IMG/VR virus record: IMGVR_UViG_3300027899_000001
Location: 310,001-374,000 of that record
DNA: 64,000 bases
Direction: 5' to 3' (one strand)
Both the position numbers and the translations under genes were made by a program. This document shows, in pieces, positions 1 through 54,618 of this stretch (the first letter of the stretch is position 1; every line of letters starts with the position of its first letter). The notes under the pieces are model-generated. The model did not search any database. It was not told where the DNA came from and saw only the letters and a program-made list of their open reading frames with translations.

Positions 1-515
1 TCATCATTTATAGTATAATGTTTAATTTCATACTCATCTAACCATTTTTTTATTTTGATTTTAAATCCTATACCCATATCATAAATAGGATCTGATTCTT
101 CTGTAAAAGCCTCTGATATAGTATTTTTATTAAGTTCGCTTTCTTTAAAAACTTTAAAATATTTTTTCCAACGTGAAATTGACGCAGTATTTGTTGCTTG
201 AGAATATGTTCTTTCTTTTCCATTTAATATATTCTTTCTTATATCTAAAAATATTGGATTAATAGTGTATCCATAAGGAACAAGATTTAATTGTAATTCA
301 TTTTTTGATAAATGTTTTATGTGATATACTATGTATAAACCAGTAGCGGGAAATGGCGTCTTATCATTAAATGCAAAATATTTACTTTCTTTAAGACATC
401 TAAGAACATCTCCTACTTCAAGATTTTCAAAACCCTTATAACCTATTCCCATATCTTTAATAGGATCAAACTCTTCAGTAAATTTTTCGTTAATATGTTC
501 TCTAATCAATTTCAT
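1..515 (-). CDS. Partial protein with two copies of the EKFxEExDPIxDMGIG motif (runs off window edge)
   Basis: Manual translation MKLIREHINEKFTEEFDPIKDMGIG...ISEAFTEESDPIYDMGIG...IKKWLDEYEI; no stop before base 1; same architecture as 28438..29262. Confidence 0.8.
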   Translation of the reverse strand, partial: MKLIREHINEKFTEEFDPIKDMGIGYKGFENLEVGDVLRCLKESKYFAFNDKTPFPATGLYIVYHIKHLSKNELQLNLVPYGYTINPIFLDIRKNILNGKERTYSQATNTASISRWKKYFKVFKESELNKNTISEAFTEESDPIYDMGIGFKIKIKKWLDEYEIKHYTIND

Positions 516-3166: not shown

Positions 3167-3179
3167 AATTAAAAATTTG

Positions 3180-3251
3180 TGAAGATATCAGGACTCGAAC
3201 CCGAACCAAGAGAGTCGAAATCTCGTATGCTATCCATTACACTATATCTCC
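3180..3251 (-). tRNA. trnR-TCG: tRNA-Arg(TCG)
   Basis: Cloverleaf; acceptor GGAGATA/TATCTTC; loop TT-TCG-AC; T-loop TTCGAGT. Confidence 0.75.
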
Positions 3252-3264
3252 ATTTTATTATATA

Positions 3265-3654
3265 TCAATACCAACTTTGTTCTAACACTTTATTACCATA
3301 ATTAAGTTGGCATACTTTATATTTAACAGTTTCTTCTAGATTTTCAACCATATAAACCCATGATGACCAAGCTGTAGTAGTCTGATATTCTCTTCTTATA
3401 TAAAGCCTTTCACCTTGAACAAAACGACATTCTTTGGCATAAAGTAATATTAAACCATTTGTATCTGTTAAAGTAGTTGTAATGTATATTAACGAAGGGT
3501 CTCCTCTACGTTGTTTTTGTATATTATTATAATAAAGAAAATTTCCAGCATATTTTTTAGTAATAAATAGTTCATCTTCTACATATACACTACTTTTTTT
3601 AGATACAACACAAGACATTAAAAAAATTAATATAATGCTTATTGCTTTTTTCAT
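3265..3654 (-). CDS. Putative lipoprotein
   Basis: Signal peptide ending LMSC. Confidence 0.6.
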   Translation of the reverse strand: MKKAISIILIFLMSCVVSKKSSVYVEDELFITKKYAGNFLYYNNIQKQRRGDPSLIYITTTLTDTNGLILLYAKECRFVQGERLYIRREYQTTTAWSSWVYMVENLEETVKYKVCQLNYGNKVLEQSWY

Positions 3655-11077: not shown

Positions 11078-11301
11078 TCTTTATAGTACAAATATAATTA
11101 AAATATATGAATAAATCATTAAAATGTTGTTAAAAAATTGTTAATGACTATTATATTATATTTATTCATCCTGTAATTCCAAAGGCTTTAAGAAAATATA
11201 AAACACCGGCAATAATTAGTATAATTACTATTATGCCAAATAATTTAAAGCATCCGCCTAAACAAGAACATCCACTTTCCATATAATATAGTTTTAATTT
11301 G

Positions 11302-11375
11302 AGGCCACAATCGGGATCGAACCGACTTCTCTGCGTTACGAAGGCAGAATCCTATGCCATCTAGACGATGCGGCC
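11302..11375 (-). tRNA. trnT-CGT: tRNA-Thr(CGT)
   Basis: Cloverleaf; loop TT-CGT-AA with C31-C39 mismatch; U73 as in the other Thr tRNAs here. Confidence 0.7.
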
Positions 11376-11384
11376 ATTTTTCGG

Positions 11385-11443
11385 ACGGGGCCCGCCTCCC
11401 ATTTAGGTGCCACGATTTTCGTGTCTTTAATAACCTGCCCCGT
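11385..11443 (-). ncRNA. Unidentified GC-rich structured spacer RNA
   Basis: ACGGGGC/GCCCCGT closing stem, AGGT/ACCT and CACG/CGTG inner helices. Confidence 0.35.
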
Positions 11444-11450
11444 ATCGGCG

Positions 11451-11533
11451 CGGAGAGCAGAGTACTCGAAACTCAGTCCTTGTAGACCCACTCGCTTTCC
11501 AGACGGTGGCAGACCCTATCTGCGTTACTCTCC
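11451..11533 (-). tRNA. trnS-GGA: tRNA-Ser(GGA)
   Basis: Long V-arm cloverleaf, loop CT-GGA-AA, G73. Confidence 0.8.
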
Positions 11534-11608
11534 ATAATCTCTCAGTGTATACATCGTTTCAGTAATACACTCATCAATATTGTTCCAATTGATGTTGAGA
11601 GAAGTTTG

Positions 11609-11693
11609 CGGAGAGAGCGGGTAACGATCCCGCTTGAGTATTGCCCCAGCCTCAGTTTAGCAAACTGGCCTATTACCTTCCTAGCCTCTCTCC
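11609..11693 (-). tRNA. trnS-GCT: tRNA-Ser(GCT)
   Basis: Loop TT-GCT-AA, long V-arm, atypical T-loop. Confidence 0.75.
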
Positions 11694-11697
11694 AATT

Positions 11698-11967
11698 TTA
11701 TCTTAGAAGATTCTTAATTATCATTGTTTTTGAATCTTCTAAAACTTTTTTAGTAAGTTTTATTACTTCATCAGCTTCTCCTTGTGATTCTTTAAGAAGT
11801 TGTTTATATTTTTCTACAGATTCATTTAAAAAAGTAATGTAATTATTTTTAACTTTATCAAGTTCATCCATAGCTTTTATTTTATCTCTAAGAGCTTCAA
11901 TCAATTCATCTTTTCTTTTGAATTCTGCCAAAAGGCTTTGTGTTAAATCATTGTTTGTCGAACTCAT
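11698..11967 (-). CDS. Hypothetical coiled-coil protein
   Basis: ORF track, fills gap between tRNAs. Confidence 0.6.
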   Translation of the reverse strand: MSSTNNDLTQSLLAEFKRKDELIEALRDKIKAMDELDKVKNNYITFLNESVEKYKQLLKESQGEADEVIKLTKKVLEDSKTMIIKNLLR

Positions 11968-11989
11968 TGTATCATATATTAAATGTTTG

Positions 11990-12079
11990 CGGAGTATAAA
12001 GGAATCGAACCCTCGGCGAACTACTGAACGCCGGCCTAGTTTTCGAGACTAGTTGTGCACCCATTGCACTCTACACTCC
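11990..12079 (-). tRNA. trnS-CGA: tRNA-Ser(CGA)
   Basis: CTAGT-CTCGAAA-ACTAG anticodon arm, long V-arm. Confidence 0.85.
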
Positions 12080-12339
12080 TAAATTTTCTTTAAAGGAAAA
12101 TGAATTAAAATTTTATCTTCATCCACTTCATTTAAAGATTTTTCATCTTTATCTTCCTCATCGATTACATATGCATTGCTATAAGCAAATTTTATGTATT
12201 CCATAGAGTTTTCATATGTTTTTCCTTTCTTCTCTAAAAAGTCAAACATATCGGATATCATTGCTTCACTACTTTTGTAACTTACAATTTCAAGAGTAAC
12301 TCTACCCACTAAATTTTTTTCATCTACAAATATTCTCAT
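12079..12339 (-). CDS. Hypothetical protein
   Basis: ORF track. Confidence 0.55.
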   Translation of the reverse strand: MRIFVDEKNLVGRVTLEIVSYKSSEAMISDMFDFLEKKGKTYENSMEYIKFAYSNAYVIDEEDKDEKSLNEVDEDKILIHFPLKKI

Positions 12340-12360
12340 ATTCTTATATTAAAAAAGTTT

Positions 12361-12450
12361 TGGCGGATGAGGTGGGGTTCGAACCCACGGACCACTTACG
12401 CGATCATTAGTTTTCAAGACTAACGCCATAGACCACTCGGCCACCCATCC
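12361..12450 (-). tRNA. trnS-TGA: tRNA-Ser(TGA)
   Basis: Canonical class II cloverleaf with encoded CCA. Confidence 0.95.
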
Positions 12451-12456
12451 AATTTG

Positions 12457-12528
12457 AGCCGAAAAAGGGTTTCGAACCCCCAACCTATAGTTTACAAAAC
12501 TATTGCTCTACCATTGAGCTACTTCGGC
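12457..12528 (-). tRNA. trnT-TGT: tRNA-Thr(TGT)
   Basis: ATAGT-TTTGTAA-ACTAT. Confidence 0.9.
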
Positions 12529-12535
12529 GTTTTTG

Positions 12536-12608
12536 AGCCCCCATGAGAATTCGAATCCCAGTCTTCGGTGTACAAAACCGACATAATTACCATCTATACG
12601 ATGGAGGC
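12536..12608 (-). tRNA. trnT-TGT: tRNA-Thr(TGT), second divergent copy
   Basis: TCGGT-TTTGTAC-ACCGA. Confidence 0.8.
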
Positions 12609-12616
12609 ATTTTTTG

Positions 12617-12688
12617 AGCCCTTACGCAGCTTCGAACTGCGAGTTCTACGATACCAACGTAGTGTTTTTCCTATTGAACTATAAGGGC
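12617..12688 (-). tRNA. trnT-GGT: tRNA-Thr(GGT)
   Basis: CTACG-TTGGTAT-CGTAG. Confidence 0.85.
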
Positions 12689-12699
12689 ATTAAAAATCG

Positions 12700-12776
12700 T
12701 TCCGAAGGAGGGGGTCGAACCCTCATGTAACCAATTACCCTTTCAACAGTGTATAAGACAGGGGGGATACTCCGGA
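12700..12776 (-). tRNA. D-armless tRNA-like RNA, anticodon TAT (Ile-AUA?)
   Basis: Acceptor TCCGGAG/CTTCGGA, perfect T-arm, loop CT-TAT-AC (imperfect stem) directly after acceptor, long extra segment. Confidence 0.55.
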
Positions 12777-12777
12777 G

Positions 12778-12894
12778 TGGAGCGTGTTCCTGGATTTGAA
12801 CCAAGACTTCCGCAATTACGAGTGCGGTGTTCTACAAAGGATTTTCTCGTGAGAAATGGTACCAATTTCCTTTCCTTCCTTAAACTACACACGC
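12778..12894 (-). tRNA. tRNA-Thr(CGT)-like gene with ~40-nt D-loop insertion and 8-nt anticodon loop
   Basis: Encoded CCA, T-arm CTTGG-TTCAAAT-CCAGG, stem CCGCA/TGCGG, D-stem GTTT/GAAC enclosing AAAGGA...TCCTTT hairpin. Confidence 0.55.
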
Positions 12895-12901
12895 ATTAAA
12901 A

Positions 12902-13102
12902 AATTAACTATGAGCATAGCCGCCATTCTGTTCTATTCCACCATTTGTCTATGCCTCAACCTTGTTATTATAGACCAGCTCACCGTCTAAACTATTTTGA
13001 GTTGCATCCTCGGCGGTTCAATCGATTATTAGTCTCCCTCCTTAAGCTGTGATGTGGCGAACTTCCTCACCTTTCGGCGCGATGGATCCTCGGTAGTTAA
13101 TT
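12902..13102 (-). ncRNA. rnpB: Minimal RNase P RNA (catalytic domain only)
   Basis: P1 ends pair; P2 TCCATC/GGTGGA; P3 GCC-GAAA-GGT; P4 GAGGAAG-T-TCGCCA with AACAGAA-TGGCGG-CT (bulged U); P5 CATC/GATG then CAA; P15 CTC/GAG with GGT; TAGACAAAT junction. Confidence 0.85.
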
Positions 13103-13361
13103 ATATTCAAAGAACACATTCTATTACAACATATAAAAGTCCGCAACATAAAACTGCTCCAATTGAAGCAAATACTAACGCTTCTTTCCATGATGCTTTA
13201 TTGATATATCTATAGGTAATTAAATTACCTGTAAACAATCCTAAAGTAAAAACTAGTATGTCTAATATGTCCATGACTTTAATTTTTTTATAATGTAAAT
13301 ATAAACATTATTTCTGAATTAAAAAAATATTTTGCCAATTATTTTCAAAGAACTTGTAAAT

Positions 13362-13387
13362 AAAAAAGGGAGCTAAAAAGCTCCCTT
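13362..13387 (-). terminator. Intrinsic terminator (attenuator of tRNA array 1)
   Basis: AAGGGAGC-TTTTTA-GCTCCCTT followed by T-run. Confidence 0.85.
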
Positions 13388-13411
13388 AATTTATGATACA
13401 CGAGAGCATAT

Positions 13412-13471
13412 TTATTCCGTACCTGTTGTTGAACTGGTTATTGATATCGATATGTTATTAATTGCTTTCAT
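13412..13471 (-). promoter_or_regulatory. Leader peptide MKAINNISISITSSTTGTE (attenuator 1)
   Basis: 19-codon ORF rich in ATA/TCN/AGT/ACN directly before terminator. Confidence 0.75.
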
Positions 13472-13518
13472 TGTATATTATATATCATACTATATTTAAA
13501 GTTTTCGATTACTTAATG

Positions 13519-14460
13519 CTAAATATAAGGTGTTGGTGTTATTTTCATTTTTCCAAATTTCTCTTCATATTTTGCTAATTTAGCTTGGCCATCTCCGTTT
13601 AATAAATAGGCTCCTGTTTTTTTATCTATATGTATTTTTGGATGAACTATATCTTTAATACCATCTCCCCAATATCCTACATTTGTTAATGGATGATAAC
13701 TTCCTTTTCCATAAGTTAATTCATACAAAAATTTAGAAAGTTCTTTATCACTGGTTACTGTATTTTCATTTATGTATTTTAAGACTCTATAAATTTTATA
13801 TCCATGAGGATATGATTGTCCCTGTTGTGATTTTTGAACTCCTAAAAATAATTTAATTTTATCAAGTTTTTTCTGATCTCTTGGATGAACTAATTCTGGT
13901 AATTCATCTATATGATCTCTTAAATATTGTATAATTTTGTCATGTTGTGCAACTTTTGAAAATAATCTAAAATTATAATCTGTTTGAAAAAGTGCATTAA
14001 TCATTCCAATTTTTAACTTATCTCCTCTTTCAATACATTTCTTAAATAAAGAAAAATTACCAGCTTTGCATGCTACCGTTAATTCTTCTTCAGGTGAAAG
14101 TGTTGCAAGAGTTCCTTCTAAATTTAAAACATAATAAGCTTTTTGAGATAAATCTTCAAATTTTGCGCCCCTTTGTATTAAAGTATCTACAAATTCATGC
14201 ATTTCATAAGAAAAAGAATTTTGTAATGCTCTTTGAACGTTATAATCAGAATGATGATTTATTATATATGAAATAAAATCTTTTTTTCTTTTATAAAAAC
14301 ATTGATCTAAAGCATCATTTATTTGATTTTTTATATCAATTCTTCTCCAAAGTTCTAAAGTATCTAACCAATTCTGTATTTTATGATCCATGCCTATTCC
14401 CATATCATAAATAGGATCGGACTCTTCAGTAAATTTTTCGAATATACGCCAAGCTTTCAT
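13519..14460 (-). CDS. DPIxDMGIG-motif protein with ankyrin-like helical repeats
   Basis: N-terminal motif; LTVACKAGNFSLFKKCIERG segment. Confidence 0.7.
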   Translation of the reverse strand: MKAWRIFEKFTEESDPIYDMGIGMDHKIQNWLDTLELWRRIDIKNQINDALDQCFYKRKKDFISYIINHHSDYNVQRALQNSFSYEMHEFVDTLIQRGAKFEDLSQKAYYVLNLEGTLATLSPEEELTVACKAGNFSLFKKCIERGDKLKIGMINALFQTDYNFRLFSKVAQHDKIIQYLRDHIDELPELVHPRDQKKLDKIKLFLGVQKSQQGQSYPHGYKIYRVLKYINENTVTSDKELSKFLYELTYGKGSYHPLTNVGYWGDGIKDIVHPKIHIDKKTGAYLLNGDGQAKLAKYEEKFGKMKITPTPYI

Positions 14461-14913: not shown

Positions 14914-15150
14914 TCATTCTACTTTTGGTTTTCCACCTAATCTGCGAGTTATTCTTCCTTTTGTTAAATCATAAGGACTCATTTCAATTAGAACCTTATC
15001 TCCGGGAAGTATCTGTATCGAATTCATACGAATTTTTCCAGATAAGTGAGTTACTATTATATGTCCATTTGTTAATTGAGATCTAAAAATAGAATTTCCA
15101 AGTGCTTCTGTTATTACACCTTCTATTTCTACGTTTTGTTGCTTTGACAT
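14914..15150 (-). CDS. infA: Translation initiation factor IF-1
   Basis: [10 protein letters not shown]...[34 protein letters not shown]. Confidence 0.95.
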
Positions 15151-20133: not shown

Positions 20134-20208
20134 AGCCCTGGAAGGGATTCGAACCCTCATCGTTCCGTTACATTACTACAGCTTAGAAGACTGCTATGAT
20201 ACCAGGGC
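20134..20208 (-). tRNA. D-armless tRNA-like RNA, anticodon TCT (Arg-AGA?)
   Basis: Acceptor GCCCTGG/CCAGGGC, loop CT-TCT-AA right after acceptor, perfect T-arm. Confidence 0.6.
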
Positions 20209-23470: not shown

Positions 23471-23550
23471 ATAGATAAGTAGGCAAACCGAATGTTCCCA
23501 ATGTAGGGAGGCTATATATGCCCTTTAAGCTCGAAACGGAACTTATCTAT
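23471..23550 (-). ncRNA. Unidentified 80-nt multibranch RNA
   Basis: 10-bp terminal stem ATAGATAAGT/ACTTATCTAT enclosing GGC/GCC and TCCC/GGGA hairpins. Confidence 0.35.
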
Positions 23551-23553
23551 TTG

Positions 23554-23632
23554 TGGGCAGAATGGGATTCGAACCCACATTTTCAACCAAATTACCTTGG
23601 TCGTGTGTATCAGACACGCTGGATATCTGTCC
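23554..23632 (-). tRNA. D-armless tRNA-like RNA, anticodon GAT (Ile)
   Basis: Acceptor GGACAGA/TCTGCCC; CGTGT-CTGATAC-ACACG; extra arm GACCAA-GGTAAT-TTGGTT; T-arm. Confidence 0.65.
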
Positions 23633-25111: not shown

Positions 25112-25804
25112 TTAATTATTATTTTTAAAATATATTTGTTCATATTTTTTTATATCATTTAGAAATATAATTTCTACATTATTATAATGAGATAAAATAT
25201 ACTTCATTTTAATTTTATCTTTATTACTATACCAACCTTTTACTTCAAAAAATTTTTGTAAATTTGGACACCAGAAATCAGGAAAATATAAATGTTCTTT
25301 TTTATTATCATCAATCCAAATTAAATTTAAATTATCTTTATATGAAACAGGTTTTACCCAATCTTTATCTAGATAATTTAAAATTTCTGCAAATCGTTTT
25401 TCATATGTTCCTTGAACTTTAACTATAGTTCCATCTAATTTTTTAGTTTCGTACCATTTACATCTTCTACTGCCTCCACTAGCATGCTTACCCCCACCCC
25501 CTTTATTATTTTTAGAAATTTGTTCCTTTGCTATTTGTGTATGCTTATATAAACTTTTTCTACCTTTTATGGGTGAAATTTTACCTTTATTTGGATGCCA
25601 ATTTTTTCCTTTTTCTGTATGACAAGCCCATATATGAAATTTTACATTTTTAAATTCTTTATTACAATATGGACATTGTTTTATAAATTTTTCTTTTTTT
25701 ACTTTTACTTTTATTATTCCACATTTATCATAATGTTTTTTAAAATTTGATATACTAATTTCTTTGTTACATTTATCACAAACTTTTTTAGTTCTTGATT
25801 TCAT
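25112..25804 (-). CDS. Free-standing PD-(D/E)xK endonuclease (paralog of 50256..50921)
   Basis: VQGTYEKRFA...YFPDFWCPNLQKFFEVKG. Confidence 0.75.
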   Translation of the reverse strand: MKSRTKKVCDKCNKEISISNFKKHYDKCGIIKVKVKKEKFIKQCPYCNKEFKNVKFHIWACHTEKGKNWHPNKGKISPIKGRKSLYKHTQIAKEQISKNNKGGGGKHASGGSRRCKWYETKKLDGTIVKVQGTYEKRFAEILNYLDKDWVKPVSYKDNLNLIWIDDNKKEHLYFPDFWCPNLQKFFEVKGWYSNKDKIKMKYILSHYNNVEIIFLNDIKKYEQIYFKNNN

Positions 25805-25969: not shown

Positions 25970-26082
25970 ACTGAGAAAATTTAGAAGAATAAATTGCCGC
26001 GCCATTGCGGCTATTTCCCCTTATTATTATTTGGCGGGGAAATTCAGAATCGAACCGATGTAATTCTTACAGTTACTACAGT
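25970..26082 (-). ncRNA. YrlA-type Y RNA (Ro-binding stem plus permuted tRNA-like domain)
   Basis: ACTG-T-AG/CT-CAGT ends; T-arm TCGG-TTCGATT-CTGA; loop-closed acceptor TTTCCCC-GCCA..GGGGAAA; D-like arm GCCGC..GCGGC. Confidence 0.8.
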
Positions 26083-26087
26083 ATTTG

Positions 26088-26160
26088 TGACCCCACCCAG
26101 AGTCGAACTGGGACAACTTGCTTAAAAGGCAAGGATTCTATCCATTGAAATTATGAGGTC
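26088..26160 (-). tRNA. trnK-TTT: tRNA-Lys(TTT), second copy
   Basis: CTTGC-CTTTTAA-GCAAG. Confidence 0.85.
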
Positions 26161-26201: not shown

Positions 26202-26235
26202 AAAAAAGCGGGAACTTTTGAGGAACCCGCTTTTT
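26202..26235 (-). terminator. Intrinsic terminator (attenuator of tRNA array 2)
   Basis: AAAAAGCGGG...CCCGCTTTTTT. Confidence 0.8.
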
Positions 26236-26253
26236 AGATTATTATGATTGTCT

Positions 26254-26361
26254 TTATTTACCAATCAAATATATCATATATACTGCGGGCGTAAGTTTTC
26301 CTCTAATGCCATTATCATTAGCATTCCAGTTGTTCACCATATGTTTCGCCATGCGTATCAT
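26254..26361 (-). promoter_or_regulatory. Leader peptide MIRMAKHMVNNWNANDNGIRGKLTPAVYMIYLIGK (attenuator 2)
   Basis: 35-codon ORF upstream of terminator; composition mirrors array 2. Confidence 0.75.
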
Positions 26362-28103: not shown

Positions 28104-28441
28104 TTATGTACTTTAAATCCTTTATCTTTTAGTAGTGCTTGTATACCAGATCTATACCAACTAAACGCAGTTTGAGGATTACCTTTAACTGTAATATATT
28201 TTGTAATAAAATCTCCTATTTTTTGATCATATTTATGAGGAAACCAGTTATCAGCAGATCTTATTATATCTTCAGGAATTTCACGTGTTTCTAAGATTTG
28301 ATGTAAATGATCTACTATCCATTTATCTAATTCTAACCAAGTATTAAAATCGCGATGTACATAAAGTCCAATTCCCATATCTTCTATAGGATCCGATTCT
28401 TCTTTAAATACTTCATTTATATTTTCTCTAACTAATTTCAT
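28100..28441 (-). CDS. DPIxDMGIG-motif family protein
   Basis: MKLVRENINEVFKEESDPIEDMGIG. Confidence 0.75.
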   Translation of the reverse strand: MKLVRENINEVFKEESDPIEDMGIGLYVHRDFNTWLELDKWIVDHLHQILETREIPEDIIRSADNWFPHKYDQKIGDFITKYITVKGNPQTAFSWYRSGIQALLKDKGFKVHK

Positions 28442-29262
28442 TCGTAAAAAGGCATTTTAACTTTACAAATCTTTCTAATTTTCGCTTCAGTAATTCCATA
28501 ATGCATAGACATACAAACAGTTCCATCTATTCTTTTTGGAAATCCTTTTAATGATCTTATATCGTTATCTGATGCATTAAAATCTTCTTTTACATATTCA
28601 GGAAATCCTATGCATGATTGTATAGTTCCTGGAACACAAAAATTTCCATACACATGGTGAAATTTAATATATTCAGGAAGTTTTTTATATTTTGGATAAG
28701 TATTTCTAACACAATATAAATTTACTTGACCTTGTACTGTAATGCTTAAATCTTTATTTATAGTATAATCAATAATATTCATTTCTTTAAGCCAATCTTT
28801 AATCTTTTTAATGATTCCTATACCCATGTCTTGAATAGGATCAGTATCTTCAGCAAATTTTTCATTAACTGATTCATTTATTTTTAATACATCAAAATAT
28901 TCGTCCCAAACTTCTATAGGGGCAGATCCATATGTATAATAATATCCTCCCGAATCTATATACCTTCTTGCTGTTATAGCGTTCTGCACATTATCTCCAA
29001 AATTAATTATTACTAAACTTAAAATATTTTTTTCTTTGTTTACTTCTTTAACTATACTAGTATTGCCTTTACGAATTCTTGCGGTGACCTTTTCAATATT
29101 TTCGTCAAAAATAATATCATTGTTTTTTTGATATAAATCTTGTTTAACTATAATTATATCTCCTTTCTTTATTCTCGTAAATTTAGATCCAATACCTAAA
29201 TCCCATATGGGATCAGTTCCTTGTTCAAATTTTTCATTTATATGTTCTTTTACTATTTTCAT
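28438..29262 (-). CDS. DPIxDMGIG-motif protein with two motif-headed domains
   Basis: Motif at N-terminus and internally (NEKFAEDTDPIQDMGIG). Confidence 0.8.
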   Translation of the reverse strand: MKIVKEHINEKFEQGTDPIWDLGIGSKFTRIKKGDIIIVKQDLYQKNNDIIFDENIEKVTARIRKGNTSIVKEVNKEKNILSLVIINFGDNVQNAITARRYIDSGGYYYTYGSAPIEVWDEYFDVLKINESVNEKFAEDTDPIQDMGIGIIKKIKDWLKEMNIIDYTINKDLSITVQGQVNLYCVRNTYPKYKKLPEYIKFHHVYGNFCVPGTIQSCIGFPEYVKEDFNASDNDIRSLKGFPKRIDGTVCMSMHYGITEAKIRKICKVKMPFYE

Positions 29263-29316: not shown

Positions 29317-29325
29317 CAATATCGT

Positions 29326-29583
29326 CTGAGAAAAATTAGGAAGCGTGTTTTTATAAGTTGTCTCTTATGCTCTAACCTACTTATCAATCTGTCCTGTACG
29401 TGATTAAAAGACGCCTAAGACACCGCACCTTCGGGAATTACGGCCCTTTCGGGAAAATTGATGTTCAGAATCAAGAGCGCTGTCATAGTTTGAATTTATC
29501 TAGGTTGCCGAAATCCATCAGCTGGGTTTTAACTATGTTGCCATAGAAAAAAGGTTTCGAAGTACCGCTTGACCTTACTACAG
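29326..29583 (-). ncRNA. Long Y-like RNA (258 nt) with unknown multibranch insert
   Basis: CTGTAGTAAGG..TACTTCGAAACC 5' motif, TTCTCAG 3' motif, several GNRA-capped hairpins. Confidence 0.65.
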
Positions 29584-29600
29584 ATGTTGTTTAAAATATA

Positions 29601-50184: not shown

Positions 50185-50262
50185 GTTGAGAAATGTGGAG
50201 TGAGTGTCTTTTTTATTAGATTTGCATGTCTTTTACGAAGTAACTCATTTCCTTACTACAAC
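50185..50262 (-). ncRNA. Short Y-like RNA
   Basis: GTTG-T-AG/CT-CAAC, GGAAATGAGT/ACTCACTCC, TACTTCG. Confidence 0.7.
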
Positions 50263-50921
50263 TTTATATTAAATATTTTTTCATAATTTTGAATATCTGA
50301 TAAAAATATCATTTCAATATTATTATAATTACTCAAAATATATCTCATTTTCTTTTTATCTTCTTCTTCATATCTTCCTTTAACTTCAAAGAACTTTTTT
50401 AAATTTGGACACCAAAAATCTGGATAATATGTGTGAATTTCCCCGAATTCATTTGTCCAAGATAAACCATCAGAAAAAGGCTTTATCCAATCTTTATCTA
50501 TAATATTTAAAATAACTGCGAAACGTTTTTCATAGGTTCCTTGTACTTTTATCTTTGTTCCATCAGGTTTTATAATTTCATACCATTTACATTTTCCGCC
50601 AGTTATCCATCCTTTATTATTTATAGATATTTTTCTTTTTGTTTCTAAATCTCTTGGACCATTTTTTCTTCCTTTCAATTTAGAAGGTCTTCCTTTTTTA
50701 GTATCCCAAACTCTATTTTCAGAATGAATAGCCCAAATATGAAATTTTACGCCTCTAGGATTATCATATTCTTTTTCACATATTGGACATTTATGAAAAC
50801 CATTAGGTTGTTTATAAATATTAACTTTATTTTGTCTATTACCACATTTTTCATAATGTTTCTTAAAATTTGATAAACTTATTTCTTTATTACATTTATC
50901 ACAAATTCTTTTATTTACCAT
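50256..50921 (-). CDS. Free-standing PD-(D/E)xK endonuclease; TAG stop inside Y-like RNA
   Basis: Paralog of 25112..25804. Confidence 0.75.
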   Translation of the reverse strand: MVNKRICDKCNKEISLSNFKKHYEKCGNRQNKVNIYKQPNGFHKCPICEKEYDNPRGVKFHIWAIHSENRVWDTKKGRPSKLKGRKNGPRDLETKRKISINNKGWITGGKCKWYEIIKPDGTKIKVQGTYEKRFAVILNIIDKDWIKPFSDGLSWTNEFGEIHTYYPDFWCPNLKKFFEVKGRYEEEDKKKMRYILSNYNNIEMIFLSDIQNYEKIFNIKL

Positions 50922-51307: not shown

Positions 51308-51339
51308 AAACAAAGAACCCTCCGTATTTTGGAGGGTTC
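51308..51339 (-). terminator. Intrinsic terminator (attenuator of tRNA array 3)
   Basis: GAACCCTCC-AAAATAC-GGAGGGTTC-TTTGTTT. Confidence 0.85.
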
Positions 51340-51367
51340 AGAAAGGAGTATATAATAAATGATATTA

Positions 51368-51478
51368 TTACCTACGCTTAACTATTCCCTCCGTTTTAAC
51401 AAAATAACATAACGGTAGCTGCTCGCTAACTTGTGGGAGTTGTTGTGAAAAAGAAGAATATGTAGGTTTCAATATCAT
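51368..51478 (-). promoter_or_regulatory. Leader peptide MILKPTYSSFSQQLPQVSEQLPLCYFVKTEGIVKRR (attenuator 3)
   Basis: 36-codon ORF upstream of terminator; Q/L/P/E/C/Y/F run. Confidence 0.75.
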
Positions 51479-51809: not shown

Positions 51810-52208
51810 TTATTTCATTGTTATCTTATACGTGTGACTATCATCTAAAGAATACGGAGTTCCTCTTCTAGTATAAACACGAACTTCATAAATTCTATCA
51901 GACATATTTACACTACTAAAGTCTAATTTTATTTTAACTACTTCTATAGAAATATTTTTAGCCCATTTATATGTGTTAAAATTAAAAAAATCACCCGTTA
52001 TTATTTTTCCTAATAATTTTTGTTTAAATAATTTGCGTAATTGAGCACGTCTTTTTTTAATTATAGTACTAATGTCTTTTTGTACATTTGTATAATATAT
52101 TTCATTTTGATCTCTTAAAATAAAATTCTCTTTGTATCCTATACCCATATCTTTTACTGGATCGGAATCTTCAACAAATTTTTCATTTATATGTTCTTTA
52201 ACTATCAT
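51810..52208 (-). CDS. DPIxDMGIG-motif family protein
   Basis: EKFVEDSDPVKDMGIG; GKIITGDFF shared with 52913. Confidence 0.75.
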   Translation of the reverse strand: MIVKEHINEKFVEDSDPVKDMGIGYKENFILRDQNEIYYTNVQKDISTIIKKRRAQLRKLFKQKLLGKIITGDFFNFNTYKWAKNISIEVVKIKLDFSSVNMSDRIYEVRVYTRRGTPYSLDDSHTYKITMK

Positions 52209-52211
52209 AAT

Positions 52212-52618
52212 TTAAATCATTCTTAATGTATACATATTTTTGTAGTCTTCTAAAACAAAAGAATTTCCATCTTCATCATATACGCGAACTTCAGAAAGAG
52301 TATCACACCCATATCCATCATGAAAACTTACTCTTATTCTAACTACATTTACAGTTTTATTTTTTAGTGGTCTATAATAATCTCCTTTTTTAACTAAAAA
52401 AGTTCCTGTCATTTCTTTACCAACTAGTTTTTCTTTTAATTCTTTACGTAAAGTTTTTCTATATTTTTCTACTATCTTTTGAAATTGTTGATATGTGTAT
52501 GAACCATATTCTTTTTTTGTTTAGAAAAATCATATTCTTCCTTATGACCTATACCCATTTGACGAATAGGATCACCTTCTTCTTTAAACTTTTCAAATAT
52601 ATGTTCTTTAACTATCAT
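52212..52618 (-). pseudogene. DPIxDMGIG-motif protein split by a -1 frameshift at A-AAA-AAG (~52512-52518)
   Basis: MIVKEHIFEKFKEEGDPIRQMGIG...SKQKK then -1 frame EYGSYTY...LVGKEMTGTFL matching flanking paralogs. Confidence 0.65.
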
Positions 52619-52905
52619 GCGGGTATTCTCCAATGTGTTTTTAAAAATTCTTCTTCAGTATTAAAAGTTGTTATATCAATATTTTTTGTTATTATAAAAT
52701 TATACCATAATTGTTCCCATTGATCAACATTTTGTAATTTTCCTGCTTTGTGTCTTTTCATTAGATCTTTTACATAATTCCAATTATTTATAATTTCTAA
52801 AACAGTTTCATTATGAATTATATATTCAGGCACGGACTGTTGAGCTTGCATATTTTGTTGTCCTGGTCCAAAGAACGCTTGAAAAAAATGTGGTGGTTGT
52901 TGCAT
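52615..52905 (-). CDS. Hypothetical protein, Gln-rich N-terminus
   Basis: ORF track. Confidence 0.55.
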   Translation of the reverse strand: MQQPPHFFQAFFGPGQQNMQAQQSVPEYIIHNETVLEIINNWNYVKDLMKRHKAGKLQNVDQWEQLWYNFIITKNIDITTFNTEEEFLKTHWRIPA

Positions 52906-52912
52906 ATTTATT

Positions 52913-53305
52913 TTATTTAGCTGTTATTACATATTCTTGTTCACCCCAACTAGAGGTATTCATATTATATTTTCTTCCTTTATTTGATGTTACTATTAAT
53001 TCTCTTACATATCCATAATCTAAATCTACTACAACTTCAACACTTTTTATTAATAATGATCTTGTCATTTCTTTATATTCTGTAAAAAAATCACCCGTCA
53101 CAATTTTTCCAACAAATTTTTCACTCAGTTCTTTTTGTAATGAACTTTCCATTATTTTTAAAAGTTTTCTTTTTTCTTTATTAAATTTTTTCGCGTGAGT
53201 TGTACATAACACTTCCATATCAATTTTTTCTTTGTATCCTATACCCATATCGTGTATAGGATCAGATTGTTCCTGAAATTTTTCAAATATGAAGTGAGCT
53301 TTCAT
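52913..53305 (-). CDS. DPIxDMGIG-motif family protein
   Basis: EKFQEQSDPIHDMGIG. Confidence 0.75.
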   Translation of the reverse strand: MKAHFIFEKFQEQSDPIHDMGIGYKEKIDMEVLCTTHAKKFNKEKRKLLKIMESSLQKELSEKFVGKIVTGDFFTEYKEMTRSLLIKSVEVVVDLDYGYVRELIVTSNKGRKYNMNTSSWGEQEYVITAK

Positions 53306-53310
53306 TTAGA

Positions 53311-54087
53311 TTATTTTATTTTGAATAATTTTCTAAATAATCCTCGTGATGCTTTATGAGCATCTGCTTTTGCTGATAGATTTTCAGGATTTGAATCAGC
53401 ATCAATAGCAGTCCAAACTTCCCACTGAAATCCCCATTCAGCAAAAGGAAAATAAGTATATCCTTGATCGCCCCATTCTGCTGTCCATGAATTTCTAATA
53501 ATAAATTTATCTTTAAGATATCCAGCAACACAAACTGCATGTCCACCTAACATTTCTTGACCAGTAAAATCTGGTTTCCAAAAATCCATTTTATCTGAAT
53601 TAAATACTGGAAATGCAATATAACAAGGTCCATTAGCAAATAAAGCTTTTTTAAGTGAATCTACTGTATTGATTTGAGCATATCCTTGAATTTTATATTT
53701 AGCTGCTTTAAATTTTAATTCTGGCGTAATAGCTTTAAATTGTCCATAAGGATAATCTTTTTCTGTAACAATTCCAATCTTATATAAAATATCCATTGTA
53801 TCTCTTGGTGTCATTCCAGAAGATTCTTGATTTGATCTTAAATTATATACAAATTGAGGTGATAAATATTCTCTAAGTTCAACATCTGTTAATTCTTCCC
53901 ATTCTTTAAGTGCTGCTGCAGTTTGTGCAGAGCATGTACCTTGCTGACCTTGATCTCTTACTGGTCTCATTTGAGGTCTCAAATCCCATATTTCTGGAAG
54001 AACTACTCTGTTAGGATATATTGATTCTAACATAAAGTCCCTTTTATCTACGGGAGATTTTTCAAGATTAAATAAATACTTTTGCAT
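53311..54087 (-). CDS. Papain-like C1 cysteine peptidase
   Basis: VRDQGQQGTCSA, GGHAV, IRNSW..WGDQGY. Confidence 0.9.
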   Translation of the reverse strand: MQKYLFNLEKSPVDKRDFMLESIYPNRVVLPEIWDLRPQMRPVRDQGQQGTCSAQTAAALKEWEELTDVELREYLSPQFVYNLRSNQESSGMTPRDTMDILYKIGIVTEKDYPYGQFKAITPELKFKAAKYKIQGYAQINTVDSLKKALFANGPCYIAFPVFNSDKMDFWKPDFTGQEMLGGHAVCVAGYLKDKFIIRNSWTAEWGDQGYTYFPFAEWGFQWEVWTAIDADSNPENLSAKADAHKASRGLFRKLFKIK

Positions 54088-54096
54088 ATTATTAAA

Positions 54097-54618
54097 TTAT
54101 TTTAATTTATCTACTACACTTTTTATTTTTTCTGCGCTTTTTATAATGTGATCTAATGTATCTAAAAAATATTGATTAACTGGAGTATACTTATTACGAA
54201 AATCTACTGATGATCTTTTGTCTCCTGGCATAATTTCTTTATCTTGCCATATATTATATACTGGTTCAAAATATATTTTTATTGTTCTATATGAATATGA
54301 ACTTGGAATGCCTGCACCTGTCACTCTATATAATGCCGTAATTATATCTGGAAATTTTACATCATCTTCATACCATAATTGATTAGCGCCTTGTTTTACA
54401 CAAAATTTAATAAGATTTATTCTTTCAAATGTATTTTCTGCATAATGAGTTACTCCGATTACTAATATATCATTATATGTTGATTGAGAAGTAATTTCTT
54501 CTCTAGAGTATTCCGGAAATTTTTTTAATATTTGAGCAAGTGGACCAATACCCATGTCTTTAATAGGATCTGATTCTTCAGAGAATTTTTCATTAAGATA
54601 TTCACGTACACGGTCCAT
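54097..54618 (-). CDS. DPIxDMGIG-motif family protein
   Basis: EKFSEESDPIKDMGIG. Confidence 0.75.
   Translation of the reverse strand: MDRVREYLNEKFSEESDPIKDMGIGPLAQILKKFPEYSREEITSQSTYNDILVIGVTHYAENTFERINLIKFCVKQGANQLWYEDDVKFPDIITALYRVTGAGIPSSYSYRTIKIYFEPVYNIWQDKEIMPGDKRSSVDFRNKYTPVNQYFLDTLDHIIKSAEKIKSVVDKLK

What the first reader, a model, noticed from the sequence alone, without database searches (positions are those of the whole stretch)
13362..13471. Attenuator 1: Ser/Thr/Ile leader above the Ser/Thr array
Seen: codons ATA TCG ATA TCA ATA ACC AGT TCA ACA ACA GGT ACG match anticodons TAT, CGA, TGA, GGT, GCT, TGT and CGT in the array below. GCTCTC, 5 nt after the stop, can pair with terminator arm GGGAGC (antiterminator) or with the upstream GTACGGA (protector), the classical 1:2, 2:3, 3:4 layout. 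Inference: stalling at Thr/Ser/ATA codons gives read-through.
Basis: partly seen in the sequence, partly recalled or inferred. Interest (0 to 1): 0.85.

Follow-up and report, generated by a model that had tools for sequence, protein, structure and literature searches.

The report
Leader-peptide attenuator before phage tRNA genes
A 19-codon mini-gene packed with isoleucine, serine and threonine codons, followed by a switchable transcription stop, lies upstream of a huge phage's Ile/Thr/Ser tRNA genes and is conserved in nine related phage contigs, so the phage probably measures how well these codons are read and adjusts its own tRNA output, a use of attenuation I found no report of.

Summary
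It consists of a 19-codon ORF (13471->13412) with 11 Ile-ATA/Ser/Thr codons, GCTCTC 4 nt after the stop, and an intrinsic terminator (13387->13366). Nine related metagenomic phage contigs keep the ORF in frame and Ile/Ser/Thr-rich. They also keep (T)ATGCTCTC 3-7 nt after the stop (one has ACTCTC) and a terminator whose arms change in a compensatory way yet stay pairable with GCTCTC. Wherever enough sequence is held, a mini RNase P-like RNA and an Ile/Thr/Ser tRNA array follow.

The window holds two more modules of the same design. One (51478->51315) has a Tyr/Phe/Leu/Gln/Pro/Cys/Glu leader before the Cys-Gln-Phe-Leu-Pro array and has seven orthologs. The other (26361->26202) has a leader carrying all ten amino-acid types of the Lys/Gly/Asp/Trp/Ala/Asn/Val/Met/His/Arg block. 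The three leaders partition the 20 amino acids as the tRNA blocks do (permutation 0 of 200,000).

Best explanation: ribosome-mediated attenuators that sense decoding capacity and gate transcription into the matching tRNA block.

Not supported: the proposed GTACGGA "protector" pairing. Function is untested.

The parts
13412..13471 (-). Leader ORF M1, 19 codons plus TAA (MKAINNISISITSSTTGTE)
   Evidence: ATG, frame and stop are conserved in eight full-length orthologs, with a ninth cut at its 5' end.
13418..13453 (-). Run of 12 codons, 11 of them Ile-ATA, Ser or Thr (proposed regulatory codons)
   Evidence: This is the only 12-codon stretch in the six frames with at least 11 Ile/Ser/Thr.
13402..13410 (-). 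Conserved TATGCTCTC. GCTCTC (13407-13402) is the antiterminator strand (segment 2).
   Evidence: GCTCTC is kept in nine of ten sequences and is ACTCTC in L090. It pairs 6/6 with the terminator 5' arm.
13359..13387 (-). Intrinsic terminator: 9-bp stem, TTTT loop, T-run (segments 3 and 4)
   Evidence: -14.9 kcal/mol. Compensatory G-C/A-U change among orthologs.
13275..13361 (-). Promoter-like motif (-7 box TTTATATTTACA at 13305-13294), member of a family of at least 13 copies
   Evidence: The TAnnTTTG-type box of Bacteroidetes sigma-A is described in PMC9723704 and PMC7366714.
13107..13274 (-). 55-aa hydrophobic ORF, first gene after the promoter-like motif
12912..13091 (-). Miniature RNase P-like RNA (catalytic-domain motifs kept, specificity domain mostly missing)
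   Evidence: RF00373, 36-45 bits, below the gathering score of 84. Conserved in relatives.
12778..12894 (-). tRNA-Thr-like gene with an insertion of about 45 nt (anticodon loop CTCGTAA)
   Evidence: Conserved in L009, L036, L050, L045 and L091.
12697..12784 (-). Divergent tRNA-Ile(UAU)-like gene
   Evidence: Compensatory acceptor-stem changes against L050. Canonical Ile(TAT) in L036, L045 and L090.
11301..12688 (-). tRNA array: Thr GGT, Thr TGT (twice), Ser TGA, Ser CGA, Ser GCT, Thr CGT, with two small ORFs interspersed
26202..26361 (-). Module M4: 35-codon leader, antiterminator GCCCGC (26290-26285) plus GAGGAA, terminator 26235->26202. No promoter motif lies before tRNA-Lys at 26160.
51315..51478 (-). 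Module M2: 36-codon leader, antiterminator ACGGAGGG (51394-51387) inside the ORF, terminator 51339->51315. Two promoter motifs follow, then tRNA-Cys.

Best explanation
The feature is a ribosome-mediated (leader-peptide) transcription attenuator of a huge phage. It gates transcription coming from the upstream operon (IF-1 homolog ... 313-aa gene) into the unit that encodes a mini RNase P-like RNA and the Ile(UAU)/Thr/Ser tRNAs.

Shown:
- a conserved short ORF rich in Ile-ATA, Ser and Thr codons;
- a conserved GCTCTC 3-7 nt after its stop;
- a terminator whose 5' arm can pair either with GCTCTC or with its own 3' arm.

Inferred mechanism: if the ribosome reads the leader quickly, it reaches the stop codon. 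Its footprint then covers GCTCTC while RNA polymerase makes the terminator, so the terminator forms and transcription ends. If decoding of ATA, Ser or Thr codons is slow, the ribosome stalls at codons 7-16 and leaves GCTCTC free. Slow decoding could come from scarce, uncharged or damaged tRNA. GCTCTC then pairs with GGGAGC as soon as that arm is made, the terminator cannot form, and polymerase reads on into the tRNA unit. This is a negative feedback on tRNA supply.

The promoter-like motif behind the terminator would give a basal, attenuator-independent input. The same design is used at least twice more in this window, each leader matching its own tRNA block.
For: 1. Anatomy is confirmed.

2. 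Conservation. Nine further contigs carry the module (L009, L036, L045, L050, L061, L090-L093). The ATG, the frame (indels in multiples of three) and the stop are kept. The leaders share I-S-T-S followed by a variable Ser/Thr/Ile tail. Each is enriched at p = 5e-7 to 3e-4.

3. L036 and L050 are almost identical in about 200 nt of flanks. They differ at 5 of the last 8 codons, and every change is non-synonymous yet stays within Ile/Ser/Thr-type composition.

4. Codon choice. ATA is 26 of 29 Ile codons against 49% in the genome. The rare TCG is 8 of 52 Ser codons against 3.8%.

5. GCTCTC pairs 6/6 with the terminator arm in 8 of 9 complete orthologs. The arm toggles GGGAGC/GAGAGC with a compensating 3' arm, even between the close relatives L091 and L092. 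The U of GCUCUC pairs with either state. The antiterminator has -7 to -8.6 kcal/mol in all, and it forms in the minimum-energy fold of the nascent transcript in L009, L061 and L045.

6. Linkage. The RNase P-like RNA and the Ile/Thr/Ser tRNAs follow in W, L009, L036, L045, L050, L061, L090 and L091, with 0-3 ORFs in between.

7. Generality.
- Module M2 has eight orthologs with the core TYFSFLQQLPQFSEQLPLCYF, of which 18 of 21 residues belong to the array's amino acids. Rare codons are enriched: CTC 20% against 1.2%, CTA 20% against 5.5%, CCG 33% against 4%. Its antiterminator keeps pairing while both partners change.
- Module M4 carries all ten amino-acid types of its block and has no promoter before the tRNAs.
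- Module M3 in another phage (L006, L089) has 19 and 20 amino-acid types in 33 residues before a mixed array of 19 tRNAs (P = 0.006 and 0.0003).

8. In the window the leader-by-block table is [12,1,5], [8,18,9], [5,5,24]. Chi-square gives p = 1e-6 and 0 of 200,000 permutations reach it.

9. Only the three leader-associated terminators have a significant upstream complement of their 5' arm (p = 0.015-0.044). The six other terminators give p = 0.2-0.9.

10. Precedent. [quoted passage not shown] Leader-peptide attenuation is proposed in Flavobacterium (PMC9723704).
Against: - There is no experimental or transcript evidence. Translation of the ORF is inferred only from conservation.
- A promoter-like motif lies between the terminator and the regulated genes in M1 and M2 and in all their orthologs. 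The attenuator cannot be the sole control.
- The antiterminator (-8) is much weaker than the terminator (-15).
- No conserved 1:2 (anti-antiterminator) pairing was found. A start-region pairing is predicted only in W, L036 and L050.
- L090 has ACTCTC, giving 5/6 pairs.
- GCTCTC shows compatibility with the arm rather than true covariation in M1.
- Orthologs are related, so the per-ortholog p-values are not independent.
- M4 was found after the hypothesis was formed, and no ortholog of it could be retrieved.
- The tRNA blocks contain a few exceptions: Met CAT at 42264-42341, the CUA suppressor, and Arg TCG at 3179-3251.
- The host is unknown, and so is whether transcription and translation are coupled in it.
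Confidence: 0.7

Rival explanations
1. A translation-dependent terminator or insulator without codon specificity. The short ORF only reports whether ribosomes are active at all. A ribosome at the stop masks GCTCTC, so the terminator works. Without translation the antiterminator forms. The purpose would be to shield the strong promoter behind the terminator from upstream transcription.
For: The terminator is directly followed by a promoter-like motif in M1 and M2 and in all their orthologs. The stop codon lies within a ribosome footprint of the antiterminator strand. No 1:2 pairing is conserved.
Against: This reading does not explain why leader composition tracks the tRNA block behind each module. 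It does not explain the enrichment of rare codons. It does not explain why the M1 tail changes fast yet stays Ile/Ser/Thr-rich. M4 has no promoter to shield.
Confidence: 0.12
2. The read-through has the opposite effect. Transcription passing the terminator occludes the promoter-like motif and lowers expression of the tRNA unit. Alternatively, the switch mainly sets the 3' end and stability of the upstream mRNA.
For: The terminator and promoter motif stand in tandem only a few nt apart.
Against: It would give positive feedback, with poor decoding leading to fewer tRNAs, which has no obvious use. M4 has the same design with no promoter behind it, so there read-through can only switch the tRNAs on.
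Confidence: 0.08
3. The short ORFs encode functional micropeptides. The terminators are ordinary operon ends, and GCTCTC is conserved for another reason such as a processing site.
For: The M2 peptide is well conserved in sequence. In L009 and L061 the M1 ORF starts 1-2 nt after the stop of a small basic ORF, like an ordinary coupled gene.
Against: Three or four unrelated peptides would each have to mirror, by coincidence, the amino-acid set of the tRNAs behind them. Each would also need to carry or precede a copy of its terminator's 3' arm. The M1 tail is not conserved in sequence, only in composition.
Confidence: 0.07
4. A chance ORF in the 3' untranslated region of the 313-aa gene, plus an ordinary terminator.
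For: Ser/Thr-rich 12-codon stretches occur 9 times in the six frames of the window. AT-rich DNA yields many short ORFs (360 of 15-30 codons).
Against: The ORF, its frame, its composition and GCTCTC are conserved in nine other contigs while spacers and loops diverge. The ORF ranks first of 360.
Confidence: 0.02

Closest known systems
thr operon attenuator (thrL) of E. coli and other leader-peptide attenuators of amino-acid operons (trp, his, leu, ilv, pheA)
   Same: [quoted passage not shown]
   Different: Here the regulated genes are tRNAs and an RNase P-like RNA, not biosynthetic enzymes. Ser codons are included. No conserved 1:2 hairpin is present. The module sits at the end of an operon with a promoter motif behind it. 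It is phage-encoded. Rfam's leader families give no match at E <= 5.
ilvGMEDA/ilvBN-type multivalent leaders (established knowledge, not tested here)
   Same: One leader samples codons of several amino acids at once.
   Different: The phage leaders sample 3, 7 or 10 amino-acid types, and all 20 in L089. The sets correspond to tRNA genes, not to a shared biosynthetic pathway.
pheST (pheM leader) attenuation of phenylalanyl-tRNA synthetase (established knowledge, not tested here)
   Same: Leader-peptide attenuation applied to a component of the translation apparatus.
   Different: The target there is a synthetase gene and the leader senses one amino acid.
T-box riboswitches
   Same: Feedback that links tRNA status to read-through of a terminator.
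   Different: A T-box binds uncharged tRNA directly and needs no ORF. No T-box or other Rfam cis-regulatory family matches here.

Membership tests
Ribosome-mediated (leader-peptide) transcription attenuators | Short ORF upstream of the regulated genes that is kept as an ORF | tested here: met
   ATG, frame and stop are conserved in eight full-length orthologs, with a ninth cut at its 5' end. Indels come in multiples of three.
Ribosome-mediated (leader-peptide) transcription attenuators | Leader enriched in codons tied to the function of the regulated genes | tested here: met
   11 of 19 codons are Ile-ATA, Ser or Thr, which ranks first of 360 ORFs. The leader-by-block table gives p = 1e-6.
Ribosome-mediated (leader-peptide) transcription attenuators | Intrinsic terminator after the leader | tested here: met
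   9-bp stem plus T-run, -14.9 kcal/mol. Compensatory change among orthologs.
Ribosome-mediated (leader-peptide) transcription attenuators | Antiterminator (2:3) mutually exclusive with the terminator | tested here: met
   GCTCTC:GGGAGC has 6 bp and -8.0 kcal/mol. It is kept in 8 of 9 complete orthologs. It is significant only at leader-associated terminators.
Ribosome-mediated (leader-peptide) transcription attenuators | Stop codon placed so that a terminating ribosome covers segment 2 | tested here: met
   The gap between stop and GCTCTC is 3-7 nt in all ten sequences. The footprint size is established knowledge, not measured here.
Ribosome-mediated (leader-peptide) transcription attenuators | Anti-antiterminator or pause hairpin (1:2) | tested here: not met
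A start-region pairing is predicted only in W, L036 and L050.
Ribosome-mediated (leader-peptide) transcription attenuators | Regulated genes depend on read-through (no promoter between terminator and genes) | tested here: not met
   A promoter-like motif lies at 13361->13275 and in all M1 and M2 orthologs. The feature is met for module M4.
Ribosome-mediated (leader-peptide) transcription attenuators | Termination efficiency depends on leader translation and on supply of the cognate charged tRNA | not testable with these tools
   Needs coupled transcription-translation or in vivo reporters.
Rfam Thr_leader and other curated leader RNA families | Match to the covariance model | tested here: not met
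   cmscan of 11200-13600 at E <= 5 lists no leader family on the minus strand.
T-box leader | Specifier loop and T-box sequence matching the Rfam model | tested here: not met
   No match.

The most novel reading that the evidence does not exclude
Huge phages carry a set of codon-sampling leader peptides that together cover all 20 amino acids and specific isoacceptor codons. Each gates transcription into the block of phage tRNA genes that decodes it. The phage would thereby sense in real time which tRNAs are limiting, for instance after host tRNA degradation or anticodon-nuclease defence, and raise exactly those tRNAs together with an RNase P-like processing RNA.
Probability: 0.55. Interest if true: 0.9.

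Novelty: new variant of a known kind. Interest (0 to 1): 0.85.

Why it matters
Why large phages carry dozens of tRNA genes, and how they use them, is an open question. Nothing is known about how their expression is set. If these leaders work as inferred, they are the first attenuators that regulate tRNA genes. They would also be the first evidence that a virus monitors decoding capacity codon by codon.

The design makes clear, cheap predictions. Recoding the leader, mutating GCTCTC, or limiting one tRNA should each change read-through. The leaders also give a sequence signature for finding transcription units in uncultivated phage genomes. They could serve as compact natural sensors of tRNA availability.

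My full-text searches found no description of such elements. This shows only that none is present in the library searched.

Tried and rejected
It has -1.6 kcal/mol, is bulged and is not conserved.
- The pattern AATAARTATGCTCTCGT in viral contigs gave six hits besides the source contig and L009. All six lie in unrelated sequence and are chance matches.
- The huge phages LR756501/2/3 share only the RNase P-like RNA, in a different context with no tRNAs nearby. They were of no use for the module.
- The 313-aa protein in viral contigs found only the source contig.
- The search for orthologs of module M4 failed. blastn and tblastn against all held loci gave only spurious hits, and the one in L060 lies inside a long ORF. 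Homologs of the 199-aa neighbour lie in a different context.
- The L009 90-aa ORF and the L093 WYL_2 ORF show no similarity.
- Whole-region folding without the terminator 3' arm is no more stable than shuffles (z = -0.09). The signal therefore lies in specific pairings, not in overall structure.
- The stop-codon recoding check was inconclusive and not pursued. The 313-aa ORF ends in TAG, but reading it through adds only one codon (read from the sequence).
- No Rfam family matches the GC-rich stretch at 29.3-29.6 kb.

Full report
CONTEXT. The window has 29% G+C. Almost all ORFs and 39-40 tRNA genes lie on the minus strand. It comes from a 405-kb viral contig, IMGVR_UViG_3300027899_000001. The finding must therefore be read on the minus strand, and coordinates below run downward.

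THE OBSERVATION.
- After the 313-aa ORF (14460->13519) comes an ATG ORF of 19 codons, 13471->13412, encoding MKAINNISISITSSTTGTE.
Eleven of the twelve are Ile-ATA, Ser or Thr.
- After the TAA come ATAT, then GCTCTC (13407-13402), a 14-nt spacer, and a 9-bp hairpin with a TTTT loop and a T-run (13387->13366).
- GCTCTC pairs with GGGAGC of the 5' arm in 6 bp with one G.U. This hairpin has -8.0 kcal/mol against -14.9 for the terminator.
- The proposed pairing of GTACGGA with GCTCTC is a bulged helix of -1.6 kcal/mol.
- The downstream tRNAs Thr GGT, Thr TGT (twice), Ser TGA, Ser CGA, Ser GCT and Thr CGT are confirmed.
- An Ile(TAT) gene appears only at a lowered ARAGORN threshold, as a divergent tRNA-like gene.

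After the terminator come:
- a promoter-like motif (13361->13275);
- a 55-aa ORF;
- an RNase P-like RNA (13091->12912);
- two unusual tRNA-like genes.

IS IT MORE THAN CHANCE?
- Among 360 ATG-ORFs of 15-30 codons in all six frames of the window, this ORF has the highest Ile-ATA/Ser/Thr share. It gives p = 2e-5 against the codon usage of long ORFs.
- Ser/Thr-rich 12-codon stretches as such are not very rare, at 9 in the six frames. Only this one reaches 11 of 12 with Ile included.
- The complementarity of GCTCTC to the terminator arm has p = 0.02-0.04.
- Taken alone these numbers are suggestive. The decisive evidence is comparative.

RELATIVES.

How they were found. The core of the RNase P-like RNA was used as an unbiased anchor. 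It retrieved one related viral contig (L009) and 57 metagenomic loci. The AT-rich loci among them carry Thr/Ser arrays downstream. Homologs of the 313-aa protein gave four more loci.

What is conserved. Ten sequences carry the module: W, L009, L036, L045 (cut at the 5' end), L050, L061, L090, L091, L092 and L093.
- All complete copies keep the ATG, the reading frame and a stop.
- The leaders have 18-20 codons. They share the motif I-S-T-S (usually ATA TCG ACN TCN), followed by a variable tail made almost only of Ser, Thr and Ile.
- Each is enriched at p = 5e-7 to 3e-4.

Evidence that composition is selected rather than peptide sequence.
- L036 and L050 are nearly identical over some 200 nt of flanking non-coding DNA. 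They differ at 5 of the last 8 leader codons. All changes are non-synonymous, yet they stay within the same composition. This is what one expects if codon class matters and peptide sequence does not.
- Ile is ATA in 26 of 29 cases against 49% in the genome.
- The rare TCG makes up 8 of 52 Ser codons against 3.8% in the genome.

The antiterminator strand and the terminator.
- GCTCTC lies 3-7 nt after the stop in nine of ten sequences. L090 has ACTCTC.
- Spacers (13-26 nt) and loops diverge.
- The terminator arm is GGGAGC or GAGAGC, with the 3' arm compensating. This holds even between the close pair L091 and L092.
- The U in GCUCUC pairs with either state, so the alternative helix is always available.
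- Its energy is -7 to -8.6 kcal/mol in all orthologs. In L009, L061 and L045 it is part of the minimum-energy fold of the transcript before the 3' arm is made.

Linkage to the array.
- Where enough sequence is held, the RNase P-like RNA and the Ile/Thr/Ser tRNAs follow, with 0-3 ORFs in between.
- The ATA-reading tRNA is canonical Ile(TAT) in L036, L045 and L090. It is a divergent form in W, L050 and L091.
- L061 and L058 carry a CAT-anticodon tRNA at that slot. It could be the lysidine type, but this is an inference.

THE SAME DESIGN ELSEWHERE.

Only three terminators in the window are preceded by a short ORF rather than by a long gene. Each stands before a tRNA block.

Module M2 (51478->51315).
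- It precedes Cys, Gln, Phe, three Leu, Pro, then Tyr, Glu, Leu and Gln.
- Seven orthologs were found through the neighbouring 73-aa ORF.
- They share the core TYFSFLQQLPQFSEQLPLCYF. Eighteen of its 21 residues belong to the amino acids of the block.
- The three Leu codons are CTC, CTA and TTA, matching the AAG, TAG and TAA tRNAs.
- The rare codons CTC, CTA, CCG and GAG are strongly over-used.
- A copy of the terminator's 3' arm (ACGGAGGG) lies inside the end of the ORF. In the orthologs both partners vary (GGAGGG or GGGGG; CCCTCC, CCCTCG or CCCTTC), yet pairing persists at -8.8 to -16.7 kcal/mol.

Module M4 (26361->26202).
- It follows a promoter motif and a 37-aa ORF, and it has no promoter between its terminator and tRNA-Lys.
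- Its leader core AKHMVNNWNANDNGIRGK contains all ten amino-acid types of the tRNAs between it and M1: Lys, Gly, Asp, Trp, Ala, Asn, Val, Met, His and Arg.
- Its antiterminator (GAGGAA ... GCCCGC) pairs with the 5' arm plus part of the unusually long loop. It wins even in the full-length minimum-energy fold.

Combined tests within the window.
- The three leaders partition the 20 amino acids as the tRNA blocks do.
- The leader-by-block table is [12,1,5], [8,18,9], [5,5,24]. Chi-square gives p = 1e-6, and no permutation of 200,000 reaches the observed diagonal.
- As a control, the six other terminators in the window show no upstream complement of their 5' arm (p = 0.2-0.9). The three leader-associated ones give p = 0.015-0.044.

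Module M3, in an unrelated phage lineage. L006 and L089 carry a 33-codon ORF with 19 and 20 different amino acids. Its end copies the terminator arm, and it precedes a mixed array of 19 tRNAs.

MECHANISM.

Shown: the ORF, the two mutually exclusive helices and their conservation, the proximity of the stop to the antiterminator strand, and the leader/tRNA correspondence.

Inferred:
- A ribosome that reads through to the stop covers GCTCTC. The bacterial footprint reaches about 12-15 nt past the P site; this is established knowledge, not measured here. The terminator then forms.
- A ribosome stalled at codons 7-16 leaves GCTCTC free to capture GGGAGC, and polymerase continues.
- The signal would be decoding capacity for ATA, Ser and Thr codons. 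The response would be more RNase P-like RNA and more of exactly those tRNAs.
- thrL gives a precedent for an attenuator that reports tRNA quality (PMC4132733).
- Leader-peptide attenuation and the TAnnTTTG -7 box are described for the likely host phylum (PMC9723704 and PMC7366714).

The promoter-like motif has at least 13 copies on the coding strand. Its box lies 15-30 nt before start codons. It would give an attenuator-independent input in M1 and M2. Its activity and timing are unknown.

WEAKNESSES.
- No transcript or ribosome data exist.
- The internal promoter motif limits what the attenuator can control.
- The antiterminator is weaker than the terminator.
- No conserved 1:2 helix was found.
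- Orthologs are not independent.
- M4 was found after the idea was formed and has no retrieved ortholog.
- A few tRNAs sit in the 'wrong' block.
- The host is unknown.

COMPARISON AND NOVELTY. The element works like the thr, ilv and his class of leader-peptide attenuators and meets five of their structural criteria. It fails the 1:2 hairpin criterion and, for M1, the 'no intervening promoter' criterion. It matches no curated Rfam leader family. The new points are the target (tRNA genes and an RNase P-like RNA), the carrier (a phage), and the way several leaders divide the codon table among tRNA blocks. Five full-text searches found no report of this.

VERDICT. The feature is real and conserved. 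It is most likely a ribosome-mediated attenuator tuned to the tRNAs it precedes (confidence 0.7). It is a new variant of a known kind, of high interest.

Noticed in passing
window 12912-13091 (-): Miniature RNase P-like RNA of about 180 nt. It keeps the GAGGAAGUUC and ACAGAA motifs of the catalytic domain and lacks most of the specificity domain. It scores below Rfam's threshold. It is conserved in many AT-rich huge-phage contigs and in LR756501/2/3. The huge-phage papers listed never mention RNase P RNA.
   Followed up: partly
window 12778-12894 (-): Conserved tRNA-Thr-like gene with an insertion of about 45 nt after the D region. The anticodon loop is CTCGTAA here and CTAGTAA or GTAGTAA in relatives. 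Neither ARAGORN at default settings nor Rfam calls it.
   Followed up: partly
window 12697-12784 (-): tRNA-Ile(UAU)-like gene that seems to lack a normal D arm. Its acceptor stem shows compensatory changes against L050 and L091. Canonical Ile(TAT) genes stand at the same place in L036, L045 and L090.
   Followed up: partly
window 51315-51478 (-) and 26202-26361 (-): Two further leader-terminator modules (M2, M4) whose leaders mirror the amino acids of the tRNA blocks behind them. M4 has no promoter motif before the tRNAs.
   Followed up: yes
L006:762-916 and L089 (about 3245-3400): In another phage lineage, a 33-codon ORF with 19 or 20 different amino acids ends in a copy of the following terminator's arm. 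It precedes a large mixed tRNA array.
   Followed up: partly
window, at least 13 sites on the minus strand (e.g. 1685, 2827, 7132, 13305, 15657, 26577, 27863, 33693, 39073, 47255, 51173, 51255): Family of promoter-like motifs about 60 nt long: a T-run, then TCAGAAAT or TGTCAAG, then TTATATTT[AG]C. The box lies 15-30 nt before start codons or tRNA 5' ends.
   Followed up: partly
window 43926-43999 (-): tRNA with anticodon CUA (amber suppressor type, labelled Pyl by ARAGORN). ORF statistics gave no clear sign of TAG recoding in this window.
   Followed up: no
window 67-126, 442-501, 798-857, 14393-14452, 28368-29248, 52138-54604 (minus-strand genes): Eleven paralogous genes share a conserved N-terminal segment, including the 313-aa ORF just upstream of the leader. 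Two homologs of that ORF in other contigs carry ankyrin-repeat Pfam hits.
   Followed up: no
window 14914-15150 (-): Phage-encoded homolog of translation initiation factor IF-1. The L090 ortholog carries the Pfam eIF-1a domain. It lies in the operon that ends at the leader.
   Followed up: no
window about 29320-29600 (-): G+C-rich stretch without a long ORF, directly before the terminator at 29317->29286. No Rfam family matches.
   Followed up: partly
window 20134-20208, 23546-23587, 26029-26063 (-): Additional tRNA or tRNA-like elements. One is called only by Rfam. Two are seen only as T-arm-like repeats that ARAGORN does not call.
   Followed up: no
window 25112-25804 and 50256-50921 (-): Two paralogous ORFs of about 220-230 aa, 77-82% identical in DNA segments, each inserted between tRNA genes of different arrays. 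They may be mobile.
   Followed up: no
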